Of a DNA stretch of 64,000 bases, positions 1-34,400 are shown piece after piece. The first letter of the stretch is position 1. Every line of letters begins with the position of its first letter. The notes beneath the pieces are model-generated. The model was given only the letters and a program-made list of their open reading frames with translations. It was not told where the DNA came from and did not search any database. Origin of the DNA: Selaginella moellendorffii (lineage: Eukaryota > Plantae > Lycopodiophyta); contig NW_003314261.1 of NCBI RefSeq assembly GCF_000143415.4, positions 3,836,880 through 3,900,879 of the forward strand, given 5' to 3'. The position numbers were made by a program, and so were the translations under genes.

Positions 1-2025
1 CCACCTTGCTTGACGACGGCTTAAAACTCGGGAAGTGGCAAAGTACTCGAGATTTTTGTGATCCGTCCAGACTGTTGTTTGATGGCTCGCCCCCTCCAAG
101 AAACGGCGCCACTCTCCAAAGGAATCCACGATGGCAAGAAGCTCCTTGTCGTGGATTTTGTAATTGATCTCCGCAGGCTGGAATTTCCGAGAATGGAAAG
201 CGACCGGATGAAGTTCGTGATCCGCTCCAAGTTGAGATAGCACAGCACTAATGGCAAAGTCGGAGGCGTCAGCCTCGATGAAGAAAGGTTGTGAGGAATC
301 AGCATGGATCAAGACAGGAGCAGAACTGAAGGCCGCCTTGAGTGTGTCGAAAGCCTGCTGGGCAGCAGCAGACCAAGAGAAGGGAACATCCTTGCGAGTG
401 AGATGTGTGAGAGGAAGGACAATGTCAGAGTAGTGATCAATGAATTTGCGGTAGAAGTTGGCGAAGCCAAGGAAAACCTGAACGTCTGACATTGATTGTG
501 GAGGCTCCCATTCGAGAATAGTCTTGACTTTTGCAGGATCCATCGTGATACCCTCAGGAGTGACAATGTACCCAAGGAACTCCACAGACTGCTGATCAAA
601 GGAACATTTCTCAAGCTTCGCGTATAGGCCGTGTTCTCGCAGCTTCGCTAGCACCTTGCGAACATGTTCGTCATGCTCCTCCTGAGTTTTTGAGTAGATG
701 AGGATGTCATCGAGGTAGACGATCACCATCTGATCAAGAAACTCCCGAAAAACGTCGTTCGCCATGTGTTGGAAAACCGCTGGAGCATTTGTCAAGCCAA
801 ATGGCATGACAGTGTACTCGAAGTGGCCATAGCGGGTTCGGAACGCAGTCTTCCATTCATCACCAGGCTGGATCCGGATCAGGTTGTATGCTCCACGGAG
901 GTCGATCTTGGTGAAGAAGCGGGCACCGCCGAGGCATTCCAACAGGTCCGAGATCAGGGGCAGCGGATAACGGTTCCGAACAGTCACCTTGTTCAAACCT
1001 CGGTAGTCGATGACTAGCCGCAAGCTCCCATCCTTCTTCTTGACAAAGAAGACAAGCGCTCCAGCCGGGGACTGCGAATGCTGAATGTAGCCCGAGGCAA
1101 GATTCTCATCCACGTACTCTTTGAGGGCCTTAAGCTCGGACGGGGATAACCCGTAGATAGGCCCCCACGGAGGTGACGCTCCTTCCTGTAAATCAATGGG
1201 ACAATCATAAGGCCGATGAACAGGCAGTACACTAGCTTTTTTCTTGTCAAACACATCCCCAAAATCATGATACTTCTCAGGAAGACTGACAGGAGAAACA
1301 TGCAAAGCAAAAAGAAAAAGAGGTTCTTCATGAAGGAGTTCTTTCATAGTGATTGTGGAGATAGGAGGAGGAGTATGACTAAATGGAATGATGAGACGAG
1401 GATACTGTCCAGTGTAAGATGGAAGAGAGAAAAAAGAAGAGGATGAAAACTGCGTAGAGTCAGGAACAGAACCCCAACTTGAGTTTAGGGAACTTTTCCT
1501 GATTCGGACTCGATGAACACCAGGGGAAGCCGTGGGAGATGGTGATGTGGGAGAGATGAGCTGTAAGTCCTTCCAACAAATCTGAGGCTGATGTAGTTGG
1601 AACCAAGGAAGACCGAGCACCACAGAGGAAGACTTGCTGTTGATGATGTTGAAGGCGATATTGGTGACGGTGGACCCGATGTGTACTCGAACGGGCAACG
1701 TTTCCCTAAGTCCAGAAGATGGAGACACAAAATGCCCGCCGATGCCTTCAACCCTTAGATCCCGTATGGTAGGAGAAAGAGGAACGTGATGTCGGGCAGC
1801 AAAGTCCGTGTCCATGAAGCAGGAAGTTGCACCCGAGTCTAGTAGCACCAAAGCCTTGAGTCCTGATTGTCCGGTGAAAGAAAGGAGACATGGGACGCGG
1901 AAGTTGCGGGAATTGGTGGTGGCTTTGATGAAAGGTGGTGAGGAGCTTGATAAGGAAGAAAAGTGATTTTTATTTGGGGAGTCCAAACATACAGCTCCTA
2001 CTCTGTTTGGACAGGGTCGTTTCCC
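1..2025 (-). CDS. pol: Pol polyprotein (aspartic protease, reverse transcriptase, RNase H), partial; in the -1 frame relative to gag
   Basis: Hand translation is stop-free from 2025 to 1: LLDSGATSCF (protease), MPFGLTNAP and VYLDDILIYS (YLDD at 706-717), FIEADASDFA and HDKELLAIV (RNase H). Absent from the ORF track because its stop is outside the window. Confidence 0.95.
1941..2025 (-). promoter_or_regulatory. Programmed -1 ribosomal frameshift signal (G GGA AAC plus H-type pseudoknot)
   Basis: Heptamer at 2025-2019 in the gag frame; 6-nt spacer; 9-bp stem GTCCAAACA/TGTTTGGAC; loop AGGAGCT complementary to AGCTCCT at 1947-1941. Confidence 0.85.
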
Positions 2026-6964: not shown

Positions 6965-9176
6965 ATGGGGGGAGGAAGGCAGCCATGCTGGAGCTGGGCT
7001 CATGTTCTGAAATTGAGGCTGACATCCGAGACAAGCCATGGCATGAGTCCATGGAAGTGTAAGTATTGCTCGAATACTTACACCGGCGCGGCTGAACGAG
7101 TTCGCGCTCACCTTGGGGGTGTGAAAGGAAGGAATGTAGAGATTTGTACAGAACAGGTGCCACTGGAGGTGGTGAACAAGGCTCGGGCATCTTTTAATCA
7201 TGTGGAGCTCACGAAGAGCTCCATGATTGCAGCAAGTCCCCAAGAGAGACTTGCCTTAGCTCACGAGACTAAGGTCGGTGAGGTGAGCGGTGGTGCCAGC
7301 TGCGGGGCAAGTGGTGGGGCTACTGGAGTGCTGGGCGAGGTGAGCAGCGGCAGCGTTCCACTTTCCGGGAGCAGCAGTTTTAAACGAAGTGCTACACCGG
7401 TGCTAGATGGTGACATTCGAAAGATGATGAAGTCTGCAAAGGTTCAATGTCTGGATGATGTAGTGGCCAAGTTCTTCTACATTGAAAATATCCCTTTCAA
7501 CACCATTCAGAGGCCAAATCTGAGGAAGTTGCTTCAAGCTGCTATTGACTTCGGCCCTAGAGCTCTTGCACAGATGATGGGATATGAGAAGCTGCAGAGT
7601 ACACAGCTGAAGAAGATTTATGATAGTGTCAATGCTCGACTTGATCCAATCCATGAGGGTTGGAGAAGATATGGAGTTAGCATCGTCACCGATGGCTGGT
7701 CTGACAACTGTAGCTGATCCTTGATCAACTTCATGGCCTCCAACGTCCAGGGTTCAGTTTTCTTGAAGTCTGTAGATTCCAAGGGCAGGACAAAGACAGG
7801 AGAGTGGATTTGGGTCGAGCTGAAGAAAGTGATTCAAGAAGTTGGCAAAGAAAACATTGTTCAGGTGATCACTGACAATGCATCAAACTGTGTGCAGATG
7901 GGAGAACTCATGACAGCTGAGTATCCTCACATTCTCCACAGCATGTGTGTGTGCCACGTCTTGGACCTTCTCTTCGACATCGGGAGCTTGTCATGGGTAA
8001 AACCACTGGTGAAAGGCTGCAACGAGGTGGTAACTTTTATCACCAAAAAACTTCATGTTCTGGCTTTGTTTTGGAAGCTGAGAAATCGGGATCTCATCAA
8101 GATGGCGAGCACAAGGTTCGCTTACATGTTTCTAGTGATGTCTCAGCTCCTGAATCTGACGACCTTGGAGGCATTGAAGGAGATAGTTGTGAGCTCTGAG
8201 TGGCAGCGATTGGACGTCACAAAGACCACCAAAGCCTAGCGCATTCGAACTCGGATCTCAGAAGAGACTCCGAACTCTTTCTGGACTAGATGCCAGCACT
8301 TGTTGGTGCTGCTTGGACTGCTCCTCAAGGTCTTGAAGCTTGCAGACCGGGAGGGGACAACTTCCGGTCTCATTTTCGAGGCTATGGACCGGATGAATGA
8401 GAAGCTTTCAAAGGCTGTTAAGATTGGGATTTTAGCCGAGGAAGAAGTCGAGGAGATCAACAAGTTCATGATGGAGGATCATGGTGAGGGAGGTTGGAAA
8501 GTAGCTCGTTGGTTCTAGATGCATTCGATCTTGCATGGAGCTGCTTTTGTTCTAAACCCAGCTTTTCTTCATCTCCCTCTCAACCAGGAGGCTCAAGAAG
8601 ATTTTGTGGAGTACCTAGAGTTGTATTGCAAAGGAGATCGAGGACTTCAACACAAGCTGCTGCACGAGTTTCAGAGTTTCTGTCAACAACTTGGCCGTTT
8701 GTTCTCTTCGGAGGCAGCAAAGCAAGTGCATATAAACTGTTTGTTTGTCAACTTTTTAGACTGATTCTCTTGTATAGATGGAGAACCAAAAACACCTGGT
8801 GAGTTGGTGGAGCAACTTTGGTGCAGGCACACTAGAACTTCAAAGGCTTGCTTTACAGATCTTGAGTCAGCCAGTTTGTGCTTCACCATGCGATCGAAAC
8901 TAGAGCTCTTGGAGCATGATCCAGACGAAGAGGAAGTCTCGACTGCTCTCCAAAAACTCAAAGAAGCTGGTTTTTGTGCACACAAATATGTGTGTCATAC
9001 AGAAGATCGAGTCTGGGAGTTTGAGGCTTATCGAGCATGATCTTGATAACCTTGAGCTTGAGCCTCAATGGCAAAGGATCCTTGCACTTCAGGAGGTTGT
9101 TGAAGAACCTCTTCAACAACCTGATGATGACAGCACTAGTGGTGATGATGTTCTAGATTTGGAGGATGAAGATTAA
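6965..9176 (+). pseudogene. hAT-family transposase (BED finger plus DUF659/RNase H fold), decayed
   Basis: WKCKYC..RVRAHL, SIVTDGWSD, VQVITDNASN, CVCHVLDL, STRFA, LHGAAFVLNP; in-frame stops at 7715, 8237, 8516 and others. Confidence 0.9.
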
Positions 9177-9634: not shown

Positions 9635-10358
9635 CTGGCCTAGAGGTGAGCCGCAGAGTCGCGGTGGTGTCGCTCTTTAGCAGCGACCGAATGCCGCTGC
9701 TCGTGAAGGAGAGGATTGCGTGCTCCACATTTCTGGGGTCGGGGAAGGGCGGAGGCTCAATCTGGTACTCCGCTGGAGTGGATTCCGGTGGAATTGCGTC
9801 AGGAGCAGGGATCGATCCCAGTGCGGCCGATTGACACGATGCTCCTGGCCTGAGGAAATCAGCGCCCAGGTTTTCACGAAATCAGCCGTGGCAACTCCAT
9901 CGGCTGCGCTGTGGTGGGTCGCTACCTGGGCCGCACAGGAACCGAGTGAGCTTGATCGAGACAAGAGGAACTTCCGTGGTTTCTTGCGTTGGGAAGGCCT
10001 CGCGCGAAGCTAGGCTGTCGAGGCTGGGATTAAACTCGTGGAAGCTGCCGAGTTCTTCTTCTAGAGATTTGCTGGCGAGCGCTTCGAAGAACTCGATGCC
10101 GGAGTCGCAACACTGGATCTCGAGGGCCTGATTGGGAAGAAGCTTGTAGCGGCCGGCTAGCGGATAGAAGAGGGAGAGCGTCTTGGAGAGGGATAGCTTG
10201 AGCTGGTCGGAAGGGACGAATCGTGCGAAGAAGTAGAGGAAAGGCGTGTAGACCCGAGGAGCAATCTGGTCGAGGCAGCTGAGAAGTATGGACGGTCGTG
10301 GTAGTGGAGAGGAGTTCGCAGGCTTGATGAGCTCTCGGACATTGGAAGCTACTTCCAT
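9635..10358 (-). pseudogene. BAHD acyltransferase, 5' half, frameshifted and truncated
   Basis: LSCLDQ, LSKTLSLFYPLAGR, then HHSAADG (HXXXD) in another frame; AAHL* just before the LTR; no DFGWG. Confidence 0.88.
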
Positions 10359-10684
10359 TGGGATCTGCCTTGGATGGTGGTGGAAAAAAGATTTCAATGG
10401 AACTAAGGATGGAAGACGATCATCAGCTCTTTCTTATGCTTCCAGGAACTCGATTGGGACTTGGATTCTAGCTAGCGGAGCATTTCCAGTTGCTGTGGAC
10501 GATGATGTCAATGCGTGGATCAGATTGTGTGCAAAGTTGAATTCCACATAAAACTGAAGTAACAAGTTGTGGAGAATTTGTTCATGTACTTAAGCATTGA
10601 TTTGAGTGAAACGGCATTGCTACTATAACATTAGATAACTGGTGAATCCAATCCAGCAAAATCCGACGTGAATCTTTGCTCGCT

Positions 10685-10875
10685 TAGCTCCCCAAAAAGT
10701 GAAAACAATATCGATTAATGCAGCGACTGTTGGCAACGACTGCTCATATTGCTATATATACATGGGCTGTGGCAACTGCCTAATGCCACATCATCCTAAC
10801 TCCCTAGCTAAGAATCTACCTGAGCATCTAATCTCAACAATAGCTCCCCAAAAAGTGAAAACAATATCGATTAAT
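10685..10875. repeat. Inverted LTR fragment (10720-10839) between identical 35-bp direct repeats
   Basis: TAGCTCCCCAAAAAGTGAAAACAATATCGATTAAT at 10685-10719 and 10841-10875. Confidence 0.9.
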
Positions 10876-11448
10876 TCATTCATTGCTAACTCCATCCATG
10901 GAAGCATTTCAATGGAGGAAAGTCAAGAGTATGGCGAACAGATCGGACAAGATCAGCATCACATCGTAAAGCTAGTAAACGTTTGGACTTTTCTCTTGTA
11001 AGGATAGGCAGACATGTGGAAACCTTCTACCTTTAACACTGATGTCGAGGACGAATTCTCAACTCCTGCCAGAACTCCAGTTCCGGAAAGCAATCTTCGA
11101 TAGAGTTCTAATTCTTTCTTTTTTTGTTATTGTTTTTATCGACTAAGCAGATGATCCAGAGCCTGGTCCTTCAAAAGAAGTGGAACTCGAGAGAGCTACT
11201 CATGAATTCATTGGAAAACATCAGTGTACATGTCCTCGTTCTTCTGGATCATACTTTAATTTCTCTTTTTGCTCGGTGACTCCAGGACTAATTTTGTTCC
11301 AAATCCTCTCCTAGAATTAATTGTTCCTTCTTTCTTGACACCTCTCCTCTTATAAACTCGTCTTAAGCAACAAACTTTTCGAAGGCAGGTCTGGGACACC
11401 ATGGAACAACATGTAGCGCCTGCTGTTGAAGGCACGTGGAGTCATATA

Positions 11449-13764
11449 TTATATTAAACGTTTAAGCAGTGCCTCCCATCTCTTACTGAAGAAAACTGCG
11501 TAACTCCATAGTATGCATGAAACACCACCACCAACAATGGCAGCCAGAATCGTTTCATCACCATGTCCATCATCACTGTCTTCATCTGTGTGATCACCAT
11601 GCAAAGGATTATACAAACCAGCACACTCTGCAAGGGGGAAGCCACAAAGGCCTGGGTTTCCTTCATAGCTGCTCACCGGGAATAATGCAAGCTGAGCACT
11701 CTGTGGAACCCTTCCAAGAAGCTTGTTGTTCGAGATGTTTAAGTATTTCAGGAAGGTGAGGTTGCCAAGCGAGTCCGGGATGTGTGATTCAAGCCAGTTC
11801 TGTGATAAATCTAGCCACTCCAGGTTCTTGAGGTTTCCAATTGTGGAAGGAATGGCCCCTGTAAGTAAGTTGTGTGCGAGATTTAGCACATTTAAGTCTC
11901 GCATGCCACCGAATTCCTCTGGGATTGTTCCAGTGAAGCTGTTGTGCGAGAGATCAATAGCCAAAGGACTGTTTACCAGATTATATATTGTTAAGTTGAA
12001 ACCAGGAGGTGCCAGAAAGAACCATCTTCTGCATCTGGTTGCAAACGGAAGTTGCTCAAAGTCATCCAAGCGGATCCCTTGCAGTATGAAAACCTCCTCA
12101 TAAGCTTTGCAGATGGATGCCTCTATGTTGATTGCAAACACCATCAGAAACGGGAAGGTTATTTCGGTTATTTCATCCTCTTCCACTACTGATGAGCGGC
12201 CGATCCAGCTTGGAATTTGTCCTGTCAACTGATTGTCGTTCACTAAAAGCAGGACTAGAACGTTGCTGTTCCTCAGCTCGCTTGGTAGGCCACCCTGAAG
12301 CTTGTTGTGACTCAGTAAAAGAGATCGAAGGCTCAGCATACTTCCAATAGATGCCGGGATTGCTCCAGATATCATGTTGTTGCTCAGAAACAGCAAGCAG
12401 AGTTTCTTCAGCCTAGATATTTGCTGAGGAATGACGCCTGTGATATTGTTAAAACTGAGATTTAGTGTCACCAGCTCACTACAGTTGCTGATTGTAGCGG
12501 GTATGCTGCCTTCAAGATTGTTCCCCCAAAGAAGAAGATGTTGAAGCTTCGGGAGTCTGCTGCACATATCCACTGGAATAGGCCCTGCTAGAGAATTGAT
12601 GCTCATATCAAGCATTTCCAGATTACCACAGTTCATGGCTGAGTTCAGAACCCGACCATGCAACCTGTTATATACCAGCAGCAAAGACTTAAGTGAGGAC
12701 CTTGCAGGGCAGATGCTTGGGTTGCCAGTGTTGAACAAGTTGCAGCTCAGGTCTAGAACCTTAAGACTTGGAGGAACTGTAGGGAGTTCACCTATAAAGT
12801 TGTTGTGGTCGGCTTGGAGAACTTGAAGAGACTTAAAAACCGTAGCTAAACTTCGATTGGCAAATACCGAGAGGAATGGTCCAGATAAGTGATTGTCTGA
12901 TAGATTGAGCATCTTCAAAGCAGCACAATCCTTCCGAAAAACTGTCCCAGAAATGTTGTTAAACGAGAGATCCAGCTCCTCCAGACTAGGACAGTGGTCT
13001 ATCTGAAATGTTGTGAAGAAGTTGGTAGACAGGTTGAGCTTCTGAAGACTGTTGGATGAACGTAGACCAGAAAGTTCCCCTGTCAAATTATTCGACGACA
13101 ATGAAAGCTCTTGTAAGCTTCTGCAGTTTATAAACATATCTTCAGGCACCCCTCCAACCAGCTGATTGCTCGATATGTCTAGAAACCGCAAGCTCTTGCA
13201 CAATGCGAAAAAGGAAGCAGGTATCGAGCCACTGATTCTGTTGTGAGATAAATCAACCGAAACCATAACATGCCCGATTGATCCCTTCAGCGAAATTTCT
13301 CTTAGCTTGTTGTGTGAGAGGTTCAAGTGCCTGATGCCTTTGCAAGTAACCAAAAGAATATCTAGAAAATGACTAGTGAAATCGTTGCTTGACAAATTGA
13401 GGAACTCCAAAGAGCATTTCTGCGGTGATATGTTGATCTCAGTGAAGTTGTTCCCCGAAGCAGACAAATTGCGTAGTTGAGGCAGGGCTTGGATTGTTGA
13501 AAGTGGAAAAAGGCCCGAAAGTGACAGAGAATCAATCTGTATGCCAGTGATCCGCCCTACTGAGGAACAACTTACACCAATCCAGTGGCAAACGTTTGTG
13601 CCCGCCTTCCAGTTATTCAGTGCCCCAAGAGGATCATCCACAGAAAGTTTAAAGCTTAAGAGTGCTTCAACCTCTGAATCTTCAGCACTTGCATGAAAAA
13701 CAATTGTGACAGCAAGCAGGACAAGAGCAAGCAGCCTACATGGATCCATTAGAATGCCTAGCAA
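11449..13764 (-). CDS. LRR receptor-like protein (signal peptide, LRRNT, many LRRs, BRI1/BRL-like island, 4 LRRs, TM, short tail; no kinase)
   Basis: Intronless 771-aa ORF; CHWIGVSC cap, LxLSxNxLxGxIP repeats, GNPGLCGFPLAEC C-cap, acidic juxtamembrane region, TM helix. Confidence 0.95.
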   Translation of the reverse strand: MLGILMDPCRLLALVLLAVTIVFHASAEDSEVEALLSFKLSVDDPLGALNNWKAGTNVCHWIGVSCSSVGRITGIQIDSLSLSGLFPLSTIQALPQLRNLSASGNNFTEINISPQKCSLEFLNLSSNDFTSHFLDILLVTCKGIRHLNLSHNKLREISLKGSIGHVMVSVDLSHNRISGSIPASFFALCKSLRFLDISSNQLVGGVPEDMFINCRSLQELSLSSNNLTGELSGLRSSNSLQKLNLSTNFFTTFQIDHCPSLEELDLSFNNISGTVFRKDCAALKMLNLSDNHLSGPFLSVFANRSLATVFKSLQVLQADHNNFIGELPTVPPSLKVLDLSCNLFNTGNPSICPARSSLKSLLLVYNRLHGRVLNSAMNCGNLEMLDMSINSLAGPIPVDMCSRLPKLQHLLLWGNNLEGSIPATISNCSELVTLNLSFNNITGVIPQQISRLKKLCLLFLSNNMISGAIPASIGSMLSLRSLLLSHNKLQGGLPSELRNSNVLVLLLVNDNQLTGQIPSWIGRSSVVEEDEITEITFPFLMVFAINIEASICKAYEEVFILQGIRLDDFEQLPFATRCRRWFFLAPPGFNLTIYNLVNSPLAIDLSHNSFTGTIPEEFGGMRDLNVLNLAHNLLTGAIPSTIGNLKNLEWLDLSQNWLESHIPDSLGNLTFLKYLNISNNKLLGRVPQSAQLALFPVSSYEGNPGLCGFPLAECAGLYNPLHGDHTDEDSDDGHGDETILAAIVGGGVSCILWSYAVFFSKRWEALLKRLI

Positions 13765-14819
13765 TATGCTTACAGTATATGTAAAAGTCCACCAATCTCA
13801 ATTGGCCACATGACTTTGACGGGGTTCGAACACGGAATCAGAAGAGAAGTCCAACCCAAATTCTACTAATAAATATTTGAACTTCATGGAGAGTTTGACT
13901 TTGCCTTGGTTGTCCCAGACTTGAAAAAAATGTTAATACTCTCTCTAAAAAACAAAGACAGAGAAGAAAGAAACAAAGAGTCCCAATGAAATCATCATTG
14001 CCAATGACGTGATCCTTCAAATAGCTTCAAAAACATGGTCTCGTCCTCCAGAGGAACTTCACTCTCACCCTCGAGGCTAAACACGAATTTTTCGTTCCAC
14101 TTCGGACTGGAACCCTACCCTGGAAGATGGAAGACAAAGTTTTGGTCTAGATAAGAGAAAAAAACTATGAGAGCTCGTGAGGATCGCATAAGGGTCTGAT
14201 TTCCCTAGAAGAAGAAGAAGCATCAGAGAATGACAGCAAACTCCTACCCAAAATGTCACTGTTCTTGATGTCGGAGCGTCGATGAGACAAACCTTCTATT
14301 CGTTCTTACTTGAAATCAAGAGATTTTCACAAAAAGTTCTTCCCATTTGTACCACCCACGTCATTTTCATGATATATTTATTTTAATGGAGGCATGCTTC
14401 TCTCACTTTTACCTTTTATACTTCATACTTCACGTGGTTTACAATTAGGCTGTCTTTTCGGAGGTTGACACAATTTCTGATCACATGTTTGCAGTGAAGA
14501 AAAAGACACTTCTACTTAAACAAAATATAAGAGATTATCTTACATTTGCGCGTTTCTCATGATGAATCTAGGTTAGCATTAAACAAGCTATATATGTTAA
14601 TAGGCATCCACTGCGTTTCTCATACTCTTACATTTTAAACTATTAAATCGTGTAGATGTAGGTTGCTGTCTGAGCTGGGATTGACACACACCATATCGAG
14701 GTTAATAAGTATGAATAAGAGCCCATTTCCATATGCATTGTAATGTAAGCATGTACACCACTTCATTTTTAAAATTTAGATTAGAGTTAAATGTTGTAGA
14801 GCACATGGTTTACAATTAG

Positions 14820-31822: not shown

Positions 31823-32449
31823 AAAGTACATTGTCCAACTTGAGATCCCGGTGAATAATGCCTCTCTACAATAAGCAGTTGATTGGCATATTAGATTTTA
31901 TTGCAAATGTGACTTTGAACCAAGAGCTACATTCTGGCTCGGGTGATTGCGAAGAGCGAGTAATCCTCTCCTTCAAAAGTGCTATCATTAGATTGCTACT
32001 AGAGAGTGACAGACTTGATTGGAAATACTGGCAACTCACCTTTGGATACAATTGCATACGTTGGACTGTAATCACAATATTCTTAGCATGGTCAATGATA
32101 TTACAATACGGCTTTTCGGTCTTTTTTGGGTTGGACTTGGCTCTCTATGCCCTCGAGGTTGATGCTGGTGCATCACATATTGATTGTCACACATGAGTGA
32201 CCTACTCACTTTCATTCTTCTCTCTATTGTTGGTCCCAGAACAATAAAATAATTCACCATTTTCACAAAAAAGTTGCAAAAGCTTGACAAATCATGTAGT
32301 ATAAAATCAAAACTCTCAAATCACAGACAAGAAGCTGAAGAGGAAGACTTAGAAAACAAATCAAACTTGTCAAAAAAGTTAGTAGTATTGCCCCAACCAA
32401 GAGGGTGATGCAATCCAATGTATTTAGCTATAAGTTAGGAACATGCTAC

Positions 32450-34400
32450 ATTGCAAGGTTGCAAAAATCACTATCTTTTCCAAAGTATGTCTCTTAGCTT
32501 GTTTTGTAAAAAGTTTTTTTTTATATATAAGCAAGAATAAATGTTTAAGATTTATGAGAGAAATTTTTTATTACCACATTAGTAATAATTTTCTGTAGAT
32601 TTAATAATATAGTTAATATAAGATTATAAAAATGTTTACAATTTATAAACACAAGATTAATCTTATTGAATATCAATACCATTAGATGGTAGAATAAATT
32701 AGAATATACTAGGAAGTGTTTAGGAAAGTTTGTAAATTATAAATACAAGATTAATCTAAATGAATAACAACAGTAGAAAACCCTTAGAATATCAAAGCAT
32801 ATTTTAGGTATATACACTACCACCTACAAGTTTGCTAACCAATATTAATGAGCATGTTTTTCAGTGACATAGTTATTAAAGTTGAGATCCAAATATCCTC
32901 AAGTGTAACCCATAGCATAAATCTCCACTATATTAATATCCACTTGGTTTGCAAGGATGCCTTCATGGTTGAGCCTCTAAAACCACTACCTATTTATAAA
33001 ATTAAGGTAAAGAAGAATTTTCAAGAGCATTTATATTACTTGTTTATATTAAATTTTTTATATCTAATGGAATTTACCAATGAACTCAAAACAGTTTATA
33101 TGGTGATTTATTAAATATTACAAAAAAAGTAATGGATTGTATTTCAAAGTATACTTACATAGCATAACATAGCATGAAATTTCATATTAGTAGTGTTTAA
33201 TTATTCTCATTTGTTGCAAGTAAAAATTTCTAAACTAATGCCAGACACAGTATCTTAAACCGCTAATGCATAATGTGGCATGAGAGAGATATTTTTTAAT
33301 ATTATGGTGTAACATAAATAGTTATTTATAAACCCATATTATAATTTACTCATTTAGCAAAATTTTGAATTAAAATATATTTTCATCAATTCAATAAAAT
33401 TTTGAATAAAGTTTTTATATTTTTTTCCTTCAATAGTAGATTATAGCATAAAACTATTGTTCAAGTATTATTATTTATTTTGTTGAAAAATATTTATATG
33501 CTTAATCATATATCATATTTTTTAATATGAGCTCTATTTTATCTATGTCTAAAAAATATTAATATTTAATTTAAATTGTTAAAAAGACAAAAAAATACCT
33601 TACAAGCATAAATCTTTAGCAAAGATAAAGCAATTAAAGAAATAATATAGGAAAAAACTCAAAGGCGTTGCAATTAAAGAAGTAATTATTTATATCAATT
33701 AAGGAAAAAGTTAAGTGTATATTTTTTATATTCACTCTTGACATAAATTCTAGATTATAAGGATTAGATCTAAGACCATTTAATATTTTTATTTTATTTA
33801 GTCTTTTAGCTTATTAATTGTTTTTCCACTAAAAATTTATGCAAAACAAATGTAAAAATCACAAAGAGCACCAATGTAAATACTAAAAAAACTTGATTTC
33901 AAACATTTTTTTAAAACAAAAAAACTGTTTAAAACAAAGATATTATCCATAACATATATCAAAAGTACTACTAGTGAAGAATAAAGTAAAATTTATGATA
34001 ATATTATTAGAAAGGTCTCAGGTTTGACTTTATTGGTTGGTTATATATTGAACTTGATATTTCTTCTAAAAGGTAGGGTATTAAAAGAGTAACTCTTTTA
34101 GGAAAGTAATGTGATAGATTGTAAGTAACAAAAGAGAATAATTAATGAGTTTGTCTATATAAAAGATTGTGTCTTAACTTATTATTTTTTACTATACTGC
34201 TTGCTATTGTATGCAAGAGAATTTATCTAATCTTTGCAACTATTATCCTCTTCTAGCAATTAATTATAGACTACAAAAAATATTTATTTTTTATCAATAA
34301 AACGTTTTAAAATTGTTGAATATCAAAACTAAATCATCTCAACTTTAGAAAATATATTATGTATAAAATATTTAAAGTATAGTATATATGAAGCGCTCTT
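32450..34400. repeat. Very AT-rich non-coding block; part is homologous to ~59040-59250 (probable non-autonomous TE relic)
   Basis: Shared string AAATTATAAATACAA.ATTAAT..AAATGAATAA...CTAGAATAT...CACTACCA at ~32735-32825 and ~59138-59233. Confidence 0.55.

What the first reader, a model, noticed from the sequence alone, without database searches (positions are those of the whole stretch)
11449..13764. Kinase-less receptor-like protein with a BRI1/BRL-type island domain in an apparent lycophyte
Seen: an intact ORF whose island (~11965-12200) reads FAINIEASIC-KAYEEVFIL-QGIR-LDDFEQ-LP-FATR-C, i.e. N-x5-C-x9-QGIR-x6-LP-x4-C. Four LRRs, a TM helix and a ~12-aa tail follow, with no kinase downstream. 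Knowledge (recalled, not aligned): BRL1-type islands have the same N-x5-C-x9-EGIR-x6-LP-x4-C spacing. ISNCSELVTLNLSFN closely echoes a BRI1 LRR, and the post-island LRRs and C-cap resemble BRL2. Canonical BRI1-family receptors are generally regarded as missing from Selaginella, although it responds to brassinosteroids. Inference: this may be a stand-alone steroid or small-molecule-sensing ectodomain that signals through a partner kinase (SERK/SOBIR1-like), or a relic of the BRI1 ectodomain's origin. Residues after the second Cys diverge, so the ligand may differ.
Basis: partly seen in the sequence, partly recalled or inferred. Interest (0 to 1): 0.85.

Follow-up and report, generated by a model that had tools for sequence, protein, structure and literature searches.

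The report
Kinase-less BRI1-like receptor in Selaginella
This spikemoss gene is an expressed cell-surface receptor-like protein whose outer part descends from the plant steroid-receptor (BRI1/BRL) family, but it has no kinase and lacks the residues that family needs to hold brassinosteroids, so it is probably a receptor for some other ligand.

Summary
Window 11449-13749 (-) is an intact 766-codon gene of Selaginella moellendorffii: signal peptide, about 19 LRRs, a 79-aa island, 4 LRRs, an acidic juxtamembrane stretch, a TM helix and a 12-aa tail. No kinase lies in the 64-kb window or within 10 kb downstream at four family loci. RNA-seq shows one unspliced mRNA ending about 200 nt after the stop.

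It belongs to a roughly 10-member kinase-less family known only from S. moellendorffii. In ML trees the family is sister to the whole fern and seed-plant BRI1/BRL clade (100/99 against RLP and LRR-XII outgroups).

The island keeps the BRL frame N-x5-C-x9-GIR-x6-LP-x4-C-x9-G. Profile-profile scores beat every shuffle, but Pfam's Island model and island-only searches find nothing.

The steroid pocket is not kept. The Trp564 and Tyr642 equivalents, invariant in 103 BRLs, are both Leu. Lys601, the Gly-rich loops and Thr750 are also lost. The juxtamembrane region is RLP-like (net charge -8).

Verdict: a BRL-derived LRR-RLP, most likely sensing a non-brassinosteroid ligand through partner kinases. 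BRL-like RLPs as a kind were described by Ngou et al. 2024, and RefSeq already names this gene "BRI1-like 3". Other agents of this scan reached the same reading on paralogs. PSKR, EMS1, NILR1 and bryophyte BRLs could not be put in the tree.

The parts
11449..13749 (-). Coding sequence of the kinase-less BRL-like receptor-like protein (766 aa plus the stop at 11449-11451), without introns
   Evidence: ORF list. It is 99% identical to RefSeq/SELMODRAFT protein P0001 of S. moellendorffii. The other haplotype, L001, has the same frame with 20 nt differences and no indels.
11247..13909 (-). Transcribed region: continuous, unspliced RNA cover
   Evidence: Stranded RNA-seq raw reads X21 and X22, plus contigs of X1 and X3. 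Cover is about 11247-13737 with no joints. A few reads reach 13909. Depth is zero over 10585-11175.
13681..13749 (-). Signal peptide (residues 1-23)
   Evidence: Hydrophobic N-terminus MDPCRLLALVLLAVTIVFHASAE, read directly from the sequence.
13564..13680 (-). LRRNT_2 N-terminal cap (residues 24-62)
   Evidence: Pfam PF08263, E = 1.1e-12.
12199..13563 (-). About 19 LRRs before the island (residues 63-517)
   Evidence: Pfam LRR_1/LRR_8/LRR_4 and repeat parsing. The pre-island LRRs alone place the family with BRI1/BRL (SH-aLRT 97).
12250..12252 (-). Codon 500, the equivalent of BRI1 Trp564: Leu here
   Evidence: This column is 100% Trp in 103 BRLs. The Selaginella family has L/L/M/Q/H/Q/M. W564H is a null allele in BRI1 (PMC13481262).
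11962..12198 (-). Island domain, 79 aa (residues 518-596), with the frame N541-x5-C547-x9-Q-G558-I-R560-x6-L-P568-x4-C573-x9-G583
   Evidence: It aligns contiguously with BRL3, BRL1, BRI1 and BRL2. It keeps 9 of 25 conserved BRL island columns. hhalign against the BRL island profile beats 150 of 150 shuffles. There is no PF20141 hit.
11614..11961 (-). Four post-island LRRs (C3) and the C-terminal cap (residues 597-712). The last LRR reads AQLAL where BRLs have GQLTT.
   Evidence: The QxxT/S loop is described in PMC10834447.
11551..11613 (-). Acidic extracellular juxtamembrane stretch (residues 713-733, YNPLHGDHTDEDSDDGHGDET)
   Evidence: Net charge of the last 20 residues is -8. The median of 101 BRLs is +2, range -2 to +6.
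11488..11550 (-). Transmembrane helix (residues 734-754, ILAAIVGGGVSCILWSYAVFF). It has no strict GxxxG.
   Evidence: Hydropathy scan and motif check.
11452..11487 (-). 12-aa cytoplasmic tail SKRWEALLKRLI, followed by the stop
   Evidence: The tail is shared by paralogs P0001, P0002 and P0004.

Best explanation
The gene encodes a plasma-membrane LRR receptor-like protein. Its ectodomain is the Selaginella (lycophyte) branch of the BRI1/BRL receptor family. The kinase is missing, and the family has grown to about ten copies by tandem and segmental duplication.

Shown here:
- The gene is intact in both haplotypes, transcribed and unspliced. It ends 12 residues after the TM helix.
- The family is sister to the fern and seed-plant BRI1/BRL clade.
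- The island keeps the BRL disulfide/GIR frame, but the brassinosteroid pocket residues are replaced.
- The juxtamembrane region is strongly acidic, as in LRR-RLPs.

Inferred:
- The groove between island and LRRs binds a ligand other than a brassinosteroid. Its surface is more hydrophobic and aromatic than in BRLs (FPFLMVF, WFFLAPP).
- Having no kinase, the protein signals, or modulates signalling, by pairing with receptor kinases: a SERK-type co-receptor and/or a SOBIR1-like adaptor engaged through the acidic juxtamembrane and TM region.
- The kinase was lost secondarily in the Selaginella lineage.
For: Identity and family:
- 99% identical to S. moellendorffii P0001. Paralogs P0002-P0010 and P0016 all lack kinase Pfam hits.
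- The best non-Selaginella hits among 5.8 billion proteins are BRL1/2/3 at 33-37% identity over 90-99% of the query.
- Only BRI1/BRL chains align in one stretch across the island (213.8 bits for residues 379-721). PSKR1 and RXEG1 align only after it.

Phylogeny:
- The Selaginella family is monophyletic (93-95). It is sister to 39 euphyllophyte BRLs including 13 fern ones (100/99). Both together separate from the RLP and LRR-XII outgroups at 100/99.
- The same grouping is recovered from the pre-island LRRs alone, at 97.

Island:
- N541, C547, G558-I-R560, P568, C573 and G583 fall on nearly invariant BRL columns.
- hhalign scores are 14-34 against nulls of 2.7-10.6 with SD about 2, with 0 of 150 shuffles as high.
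- The same island scores at null level against canonical RLP islands.

Model:
- Best matches are BRL3, BRI1 and BRL1, with Z 43-46 and 359-365 of 389 residues at 1.9-2.2 A. Other receptors reach Z 35.5 or less with 290-327 residues aligned.

No kinase.

Expression: stranded reads on the gene's strand at depth 4-19, no joints, and zero cover downstream.

Constraint:
- dN/dS is 0.37 between haplotypes and 0.49 against the L004 paralog.
- The island core 531-589 shows 0 changes, where about 5 are expected.

RLP-type features: juxtamembrane charge is -8 against a BRL median of +2. Negatively charged juxtamembrane regions are reported only for ID+4LRR RLPs (PMC10834447).
Against: - PSKR, PSY1R, EMS1, NILR1, bryophyte BRLs and other lycophyte sequences could not be obtained. 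'Sister to BRI1/BRL' is therefore tested only against canonical RLPs and LRR-XII kinases. The family also sits on a long branch (about 1.4 changes per site).
- Pfam Island (PF20141) does not hit.
- Island-only searches find no BRL.
- With a Selaginella-only alignment, AlphaFold leaves the island unfolded (pLDDT 28-39).
- SERK-contact features are weak in this copy: QxxT/S reads QLAL, and the Thr750 equivalent is Leu.
- The TM helix has no GxxxG.
- Ligand, partners and any phenotype are untested.
Confidence: 0.62

Rival explanations
1. It is a genuine brassinosteroid (or related sterol) sensor. It would be the missing receptor behind Selaginella's growth response to brassinosteroids, binding the hormone in the island/LRR groove and signalling through SERK and another kinase.
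For: - Selaginella elongates in response to BR and has CYP90 genes, but no BRI1/BRL kinase has been reported (PMC3862569; PMC9223546).
- The ectodomain is BRL-related, and the island keeps the disulfide/GIR frame and the Gly644 equivalent.
- The BRI1 pocket tolerates many substitutions, and BRL2 still binds BRs at medium affinity (PMC13481262).
- Aromatic residues stand near the Tyr597/Tyr599 positions (FPF).
Against: - The Trp564 equivalent is Leu, and L/M/Q/H/M in paralogs, where all 103 BRLs have Trp. W564H is a null allele.
- The Tyr642 equivalent, 100% Tyr in BRLs, is Leu. The Lys/Arg601 equivalent is Ile.
- All seven conserved Gly positions and Glu617 are lost. Only 9 of 25 conserved island columns are kept, against 72% of conserved LRR columns.
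- PF20141 gives no hit.
- The Thr750 equivalent, which contacts SERK, is Leu.
Confidence: 0.07
2. It is a ligand-independent modulator or decoy: a truncated receptor that titrates co-receptors (SERKs) or an extracellular ligand away from signalling kinases, without transmitting a signal itself.
For: - There is no kinase and only a 12-aa tail.
- Truncated LRR-only paralogs of LRR-RLKs are common and long-lived, and have been proposed to act like microproteins (PMC7318236).
- The functions of BRL-, PSKR- and PSY1R-like RLPs remain unknown (PMC10834447).
Against: - Selaginella has no full-length BRL for it to antagonise.
- The SERK-contact loop is degraded in this copy.
- The acidic juxtamembrane region is the feature linked to adaptor-kinase pairing in signalling RLPs.
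- Paralog differences cluster on the putative ligand-facing strand 495-501, which suggests diversifying specificities.
Confidence: 0.15
3. It is an ordinary LRR-RLP of the canonical immune-type clade. Its resemblance to BRI1/BRL would then be chance or convergence on a Cys/GIR motif.
For: - The ID + 4 LRR + acidic juxtamembrane + TM + short tail layout is that of canonical RLPs.
- The C-cap 'SSYEGNPGLCGFPL' and the Glu at position 2 of the penultimate LRR look RLP- or PSKR-like.
- The C3-only tree is unresolved, and the nearest non-family row there is an RLP.
- The family is expanded in tandem, with degenerate copies.
Against: - Trees of the whole module and of the pre-island LRRs group it with BRLs against three canonical RLPs.
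- The island profile matches BRL islands but not RLP islands.
- The island has no Yx8KG or Kx5Y motif, read directly from the sequence.
- Top database hits are BRLs.
Confidence: 0.1
4. It is a decaying relic, an expressed pseudogene-like remnant with no function.
For: - The family includes broken or internally deleted copies (L004 copy 1, P0121; another agent reports a frameshifted allele).
- dN/dS of 0.37-0.49 is only moderately constrained.
Against: - The frame of 766 codons is intact in both haplotypes with no indels.
- It is transcribed.
- The kinase-less layout is shared with P0016, which is only 36% identical, so it is old and has been retained.
- The island core is invariant among close paralogs.
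Confidence: 0.06

Closest known systems
BRI1/BRL1/BRL2/BRL3 brassinosteroid receptor kinases (LRR-RLK Xb)
   Same: - LRRNT cap and a superhelical LRR ectodomain.
- An island of about 70-80 aa placed four LRRs before the C-cap.
- The island Cys pair, GIR motif, Pro, and the Gly at the bri1-6 position.
- 33-38% identity over the ectodomain.
- The model superposes on them at Z 43-46.
   Different: - No juxtamembrane or kinase domain.
- PF20141 is not matched.
- The Trp564, Tyr642, Lys601 and Thr750 equivalents and the Gly-rich loops are replaced.
- The island has 4-5 extra residues.
- The juxtamembrane region is acidic instead of basic.
[quoted passage not shown] 2024 (PMC10834447), and the truncated paralogs AtRLP2/AtRLP3 of PSY1R (Man et al. 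2020, PMC7318236)
   Same: They are kinase-less receptor-like proteins whose ectodomains belong to an LRR-RLK-Xb clade. Their function is unknown.
   Different: - The published BRL-like RLPs are described as highly similar to BRL1/BRL3 and as keeping the BR-binding residues.
- The Selaginella family is old and strongly diverged, and it has lost those residues.
- It is expanded to about ten copies.
- It appears to be the only BRL-type sequence left in its genome.
Canonical ID+4LRR LRR-RLPs (RLP23, RXEG1, Cf-type)
   Same: Island followed by four LRRs, a strongly acidic extracellular juxtamembrane region, a single TM helix, a short tail and no kinase. They depend on partner kinases (SOBIR1, SERKs).
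   Different: - The island lacks the Yx8KG and Kx5Y motifs and instead carries the BRL Cys/GIR frame.
- There is no GxxxG in the TM helix.
- The family groups with BRLs, not with the three RLPs available.
Fern BRL2-type receptor kinases (CtBRL2s; Adiantum and Ceratopteris homologues P0125-P0139, P0190, P0195)
   Same: They are non-seed-plant members of the BRI1/BRL family with diverged islands. Several also lack a PF20141 hit in the precomputed Pfam listings, and one (P0190) has even lost both island Cys residues.
   Different: The fern proteins keep the Xb kinase and the Trp564 equivalent. They lie inside the euphyllophyte clade, whereas the Selaginella family lies outside it.

Membership tests
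BRI1/BRL receptor kinases (LRR-RLK Xb) | Cytoplasmic Xb-type Ser/Thr kinase domain after the TM helix | tested here: not met
   The protein ends 12 aa after the TM helix. tblastn finds no kinase in the window. No RLK-type kinase lies within 10 kb downstream in L001-L004. RNA reads show no splice to a further exon.
BRI1/BRL receptor kinases (LRR-RLK Xb) | An island of about 70 aa interrupting the LRRs, with four LRRs after it | tested here: met
   A 79-aa island at residues 518-596, followed by LRRs at 597, 619, 643 and 667. It aligns contiguously with BRL3, BRL1, BRI1 and BRL2.
BRI1/BRL receptor kinases (LRR-RLK Xb) | Match to Pfam PF20141 (Brassinosteroid receptor island domain) | tested here: not met
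   No hit at E<=10 for the island piece, nor for the whole protein, P0005 or P0016. The controls P0015 and P0019 score 110 and 101 bits. By the precomputed Pfam listings, some fern BRL kinases also lack this hit.
BRI1/BRL receptor kinases (LRR-RLK Xb) | Conserved island frame: Cys pair, GIR, Pro, and Gly at the bri1-6 site | tested here: met
   N541, C547, G558, I559, R560, P568, C573 and G583 coincide with BRL columns conserved at 92-100%. The island profile comparison beats 150 of 150 shuffles.
BRI1/BRL receptor kinases (LRR-RLK Xb) | Ectodomain falls in or next to the BRI1/BRL clade in a phylogeny | tested here: inconclusive
   It is sister to all 39 euphyllophyte BRLs. Support is 100/99 against canonical RLPs and LRR-XII kinases. 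PSKR, PSY1R, EMS1, NILR1 and bryophyte BRLs were not available, so the test is incomplete.
BRI1/BRL receptor kinases (LRR-RLK Xb) | Brassinosteroid pocket residues (Trp564, Tyr599, Lys601, Leu615, Tyr642, Gly644) | tested here: not met
   W564 is L, K601 is I, Y642 is L and L615 is V. Only G644 and an aromatic residue near Y599 are kept. The residue roles come from PMC13481262.
BRI1/BRL receptor kinases (LRR-RLK Xb) | Binds brassinosteroids and recruits SERK | not testable with these tools
   This needs purified ectodomain and binding assays.
LRR receptor-like proteins of the ID+4LRR clade | No kinase, a single TM helix and a short cytoplasmic tail | tested here: met
LRR receptor-like proteins of the ID+4LRR clade | Negatively charged extracellular juxtamembrane region | tested here: met
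   Net charge is -8 (family range -4 to -8), against a BRL median of +2. The criterion comes from PMC10834447.
LRR receptor-like proteins of the ID+4LRR clade | GxxxG motif in the TM helix | tested here: not met
   None of the 6 family members has GxxxG. Only AxxxG and GxxxS are present.
LRR receptor-like proteins of the ID+4LRR clade | Yx8KG and/or Kx5Y motifs in the island | tested here: not met
   The island sequence contains neither motif. Its profile scores at null level against three RLP islands.
LRR receptor-like proteins of the ID+4LRR clade | QxxT/S loop in the last LRR, used for SERK contact | tested here: not met
   The window copy reads QLAL. Paralogs P0006 (QLPT) and P0016 (QLTT) keep the motif.

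The most novel reading that the evidence does not exclude
The Selaginella BRL-derived, kinase-less family could be the long-sought perception module for brassinosteroids, or for another sterol-like small molecule, in a plant that responds to BR yet has no BRI1/BRL kinase. It would bind the ligand in a remodelled, more hydrophobic island groove and signal through SERK plus an adaptor kinase. That would amount to steroid perception by an RLP.
Probability: 0.07. Interest if true: 0.9.

Novelty: new variant of a known kind. Interest (0 to 1): 0.5.

Why it matters
Reviews and primary papers state that S. moellendorffii has no BRI1/BRL homologue, and they date the island domain to seed plants or ferns (PMC3862569, PMC4926431, PMC9223546). 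Those surveys searched for receptor kinases.

This gene and its paralogs show that the BRL ectodomain lineage did survive in Selaginella, as an expressed kinase-less family. Two consequences follow:
- The BRL-type island frame would predate the split of lycophytes and euphyllophytes.
- The family is a natural case of an LRR-RLK-Xb ectodomain combined with RLP-type juxtamembrane features. This is the modular evolution proposed by Ngou et al. 2024.

It does not explain Selaginella's brassinosteroid response, because the steroid pocket is not conserved.

Tried and rejected
- Island-only searches gave nothing for BRLs: PDB phmmer, Pfam at E<=10, a word-index search of the island region (Selaginella paralogs only) and a profile search of 1.84 billion representatives. 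In the last one, the two extra hits, P0122 and P0123, are bacterial repeat proteins that match by summed short stretches. I treat them as spurious.
- ESM Atlas features for the island region returned only generic LRR clusters.
- A PDB search with the C3 region alone was uninformative, because summed LRR matches put FLS2 and GSO1 first.
- The C3-only tree was unresolved.
- AlphaFold with a Selaginella-only alignment left the island unfolded. The fold evidence is therefore not independent of BRL sequences.
- Exact-sequence look-ups for P0003 and P0004 found no contig.
- The kinase genes about 9 kb downstream in L001 and L004 are CAMK-like, lie on the opposite strand and are 25-34% identical to BRL kinases. 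I rejected them as the lost kinase.
- RefSeq's extra 127 N-terminal residues (P0001) lie upstream of the signal peptide and resemble a C2-domain remnant. I treat them as a likely gene-model artefact.
- I could not obtain PSKR, PSY1R, EMS1, NILR1 or bryophyte BRL sequences by reference, and I did not type any from memory.
Full report
OBSERVATION

The ORF exists at 11449..13764 on the minus strand. The mechanical start is a TTG. The first ATG is at 13749 and gives 766 aa, opening with a signal peptide.

The protein contains:
- an LRRNT_2 cap (PF08263) and many LRR hits, with no kinase family;
- about 19 LRRs;
- a 79-aa non-LRR island (residues 518-596, window 11962-12198);
- four more LRRs and the C-cap;
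- the stretch YNPLHGDHTDEDSDDGHGDET;
- a 21-aa TM helix and the tail SKRWEALLKRLI.

tblastn with the cytoplasmic domains of two BRLs finds no kinase anywhere in the 64-kb window.

ORGANISM AND ANNOTATION

The best database hit is P0001, at 99% identity and full coverage. RefSeq names it 'receptor-like protein kinase BRI1-like 3 [Selaginella moellendorffii]', an automatic name for a protein with no kinase domain.

That locus is L001 (GL377573.1). It is collinear with the window at 96-98% nucleotide identity, so it is the other haplotype or another assembly of the same locus. The two alleles differ at 20 of 2301 coding bases (11 aa, no indels, dN/dS 0.37). Downstream of 9642 the window carries extra DNA with a DUF659 (hAT-type) ORF that L001 lacks.

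EXPRESSION AND GENE STRUCTURE

Two stranded RNA-seq runs cover about 11250-13740 continuously on the gene's strand, at depth 4-19 from about 12% of each run. There are no joints, and depth is zero between 10585 and 11175. Two assemblies of other runs, likely transcriptomes, end at 11247.

The mRNA is therefore unspliced across the ORF and ends about 200 nt after the stop. There is no kinase exon. The reads carry about 15 fixed differences from the window, which match the other allele.

The only kinase genes within 10 kb downstream of L001 and of the paralogous locus L004 are CAMK-like genes of about 270-310 aa on the opposite strand. They are 25-34% identical to BRL kinases and unrelated to RLKs. 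L002 and L003 have none.

A FAMILY

S. moellendorffii has about ten related proteins. P0002-P0010 are 57-91% identical, and P0016 is 36% identical. None has a kinase Pfam hit.

L004 repeats the neighbourhood of this locus (Transferase, Amidohydro_3, Cupin_8, kinase). It also holds a second, internally deleted tandem copy. The family therefore grew by both segmental and tandem duplication. The kinase-less layout is shared with P0016 and so is old.

An island profile searched against 1.84 billion representative proteins finds only this family. Two weak bacterial hits in that search match by summed short repeats, and I treat them as spurious.

RELATIONSHIP TO BRI1/BRL

Among 5.8 billion proteins, the best non-Selaginella hits are almost all BRL1/2/3. 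They are 33-37% identical over 90-99% of the query and all carry PF20141. PSKR, EMS1 and NILR1 fall within the searched length range but do not appear among the 120 best.

Against the PDB, only BRL3, BRL1, BRI1 and BRL2 align in a single stretch through the island (residues 379-721, 213.8 bits for BRL3). PSKR1 and RXEG1 align only after it.

ML trees of the module 340-728 give three results:
- The Selaginella family is monophyletic (93-95).
- It is sister to a 100/99-supported clade of all fern and seed-plant BRLs.
- Both together are split from three canonical RLPs and three LRR-XII kinases at 97-100.

The pre-island LRRs alone give the same grouping, at 97.

This is the position expected for a lycophyte co-orthologue. 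The BRI1 and BRL2 clades are reported to have arisen by a duplication in the euphyllophyte ancestor (bioRxiv 10.1101/2024.10.09.617452).

Caveats: the family sits on a long branch. I had no PSKR, PSY1R, EMS1, NILR1 or bryophyte BRL sequences to add.

THE ISLAND

Of 25 island columns conserved at 90% or more in 103 BRLs, the window protein keeps 9: F538, N541, C547, G558, I559, R560, P568, C573 and G583. It keeps 90 of 125 such columns (72%) outside the island.

hhalign of the Selaginella island profile against the BRL island profile scores 14-34. Column-shuffled nulls score 2.7-10.6 (SD about 2), and 0 of 150 shuffles are as high in each of four settings. The same island scores at null level against three canonical RLP islands.

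Three other tests find no similarity:
- PF20141 gives no hit even at E<=10, while two BRL controls give 101-110 bits.
- The island alone finds nothing in the PDB.
- The library-wide profile search finds no BRL.

An AlphaFold model built with an alignment that includes BRLs has pLDDT 84 overall and 51-77 in the island. It superposes on BRL3, BRI1 and BRL1 at Z 43-46, with 359-365 of 389 residues at 1.9-2.2 A. Receptors without that island reach Z 35.5 or less with about 290-327 residues aligned. With a Selaginella-only alignment the island is not folded (pLDDT 28-39), so this is not independent evidence.

My reading is that the island is a strongly diverged homologue of the BRL island.

IS IT A STEROID SENSOR?

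Probably not. Hothorn and colleagues (PMC13481262) report:
- Trp564 of the LRR core is essential, and W564H behaves like a null allele.
- Tyr599, Lys601 and Tyr642 position the ligand for SERK binding.
- G644D (bri1-6) strongly reduces binding.

In this protein:
- The Trp564 equivalent is Leu, and L/M/Q/H/M in paralogs, although the column is 100% Trp in 103 BRLs.
- The Tyr642 equivalent, 100% Tyr in BRLs, is Leu.
- The Lys/Arg601 equivalent is Ile.
- All seven conserved Gly positions and the Glu of LxEF are gone.
- Only the Gly644 equivalent and an aromatic residue near Tyr599 remain.

The Thr of the QxxT loop (my mapping: BRI1 Thr750, the site of bri1-102 as I recall it) is Leu here. It is kept in P0006 and P0016.

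HOW IT LIKELY WORKS

The region after the C-cap is RLP-like. The net charge of the last 20 extracellular residues is -8, against a median of +2 (range -2 to +6) in 101 BRLs. Ngou et al. report negative juxtamembrane regions only in ID+4LRR RLPs and link them to BAK1/SOBIR1 pairing. The TM helix lacks a strict GxxxG.

Against the 91%-identical paralog in L004, dN/dS is 0.49. The island core 531-589 has no change. Seven of the 41 non-synonymous differences cluster at residues 495-501, the strand that carries the Trp564 equivalent. This pattern suggests a conserved island scaffold with a variable ligand-facing strand.

I therefore favour a ligand-binding RLP that relies on partner kinases, with an unknown, non-brassinosteroid ligand. 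A decoy or modulator role, a canonical-RLP origin, a functionless relic and true steroid sensing are the ranked rivals.

COMPARISON WITH WHAT IS KNOWN

The literature says Selaginella has no BRI1/BRL homologue and no island domain (PMC3862569, PMC4926431, PMC9223546).

Ngou et al. [quoted passage not shown] They left the function of these proteins open. Selaginella is not named in the main text. Man et al. 2020 showed that LRR-only truncated paralogs of LRR-RLKs are common.

So the kind is known. This family is an old, diverged and expanded variant, and apparently the only BRL-type sequence in its genome.

Two earlier notes of this scan (s1-432167, s1-408288) reached the same reading on paralogs elsewhere in the genome. 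I did not use them as evidence.

VERDICT

The gene is a BRL-derived, kinase-less RLP that is unlikely to bind brassinosteroids. Interest is moderate (0.5).

Noticed in passing
window 12919-12985: A spike of RNA reads (depth about 130, against about 10 for the gene) runs in the orientation opposite to the RLP mRNA, and every read has loose ends on both sides. A 66-nt piece of this coding sequence is therefore part of a much more abundant transcript from another locus. The flanking letters are not in the window or in L001-L004.
   Followed up: partly
window 6965-8236 (+) and everything below 9642: DUF659 (PF04937, hAT-transposase-associated) ORFs are split by a stop. This stretch has no counterpart in the other haplotype L001, so it looks like a haplotype-specific transposon insertion downstream of the RLP gene.
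   Followed up: partly
window 9885-10397 (-): An N-terminal fragment of 171 aa from a BAHD-type acyltransferase (PF02458). It has low, separate RNA cover. A 413-aa copy lies downstream of the paralog in L004.
   Followed up: partly
L004 10001-11630 and 12327-14409: Two tandem copies of the RLP. The first is internally deleted but keeps the island remnant 'HEEVFILQGIRLDDFEH'. RefSeq fuses both into one 940-aa model (P0002). The block Transferase, Amidohydro_3, Cupin_8 and kinase downstream repeats the L001 neighbourhood, which indicates a segmental duplication.
   Followed up: partly
window 13750-14100; L001 10001-10977: The RefSeq model P0001 adds 127 residues in front of the signal peptide. 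They include a C2-domain-like remnant (compare P0121, and the C2 gene just upstream of the L004 copy). A few reads reach 13909 and then continue as sequence that matches L004 near 9861. The extension is probably a gene-model artefact or a paralog cross-match.
   Followed up: partly
window 12247-12267 (residues 495-501): Seven of the 41 non-synonymous differences from the L004 paralog cluster in the one LRR strand that carries the BRI1 Trp564 equivalent. The island core (residues 531-589) has none.
   Followed up: partly
fern proteins P0135, P0137, P0139, P0190, P0195: By the precomputed Pfam listings, these fern BRI1/BRL-family kinases lack a PF20141 hit, and P0190 has lost both island cysteines. 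The Pfam island model is therefore not a reliable membership test outside seed plants.
   Followed up: partly
window 42-179 (-) and 32001-34000: There is a weak LRRNT-like tblastn match at the very start of the window (E = 2e-4), and a 2-kb stretch of only 25.7% G+C. I looked at neither further.
   Followed up: no
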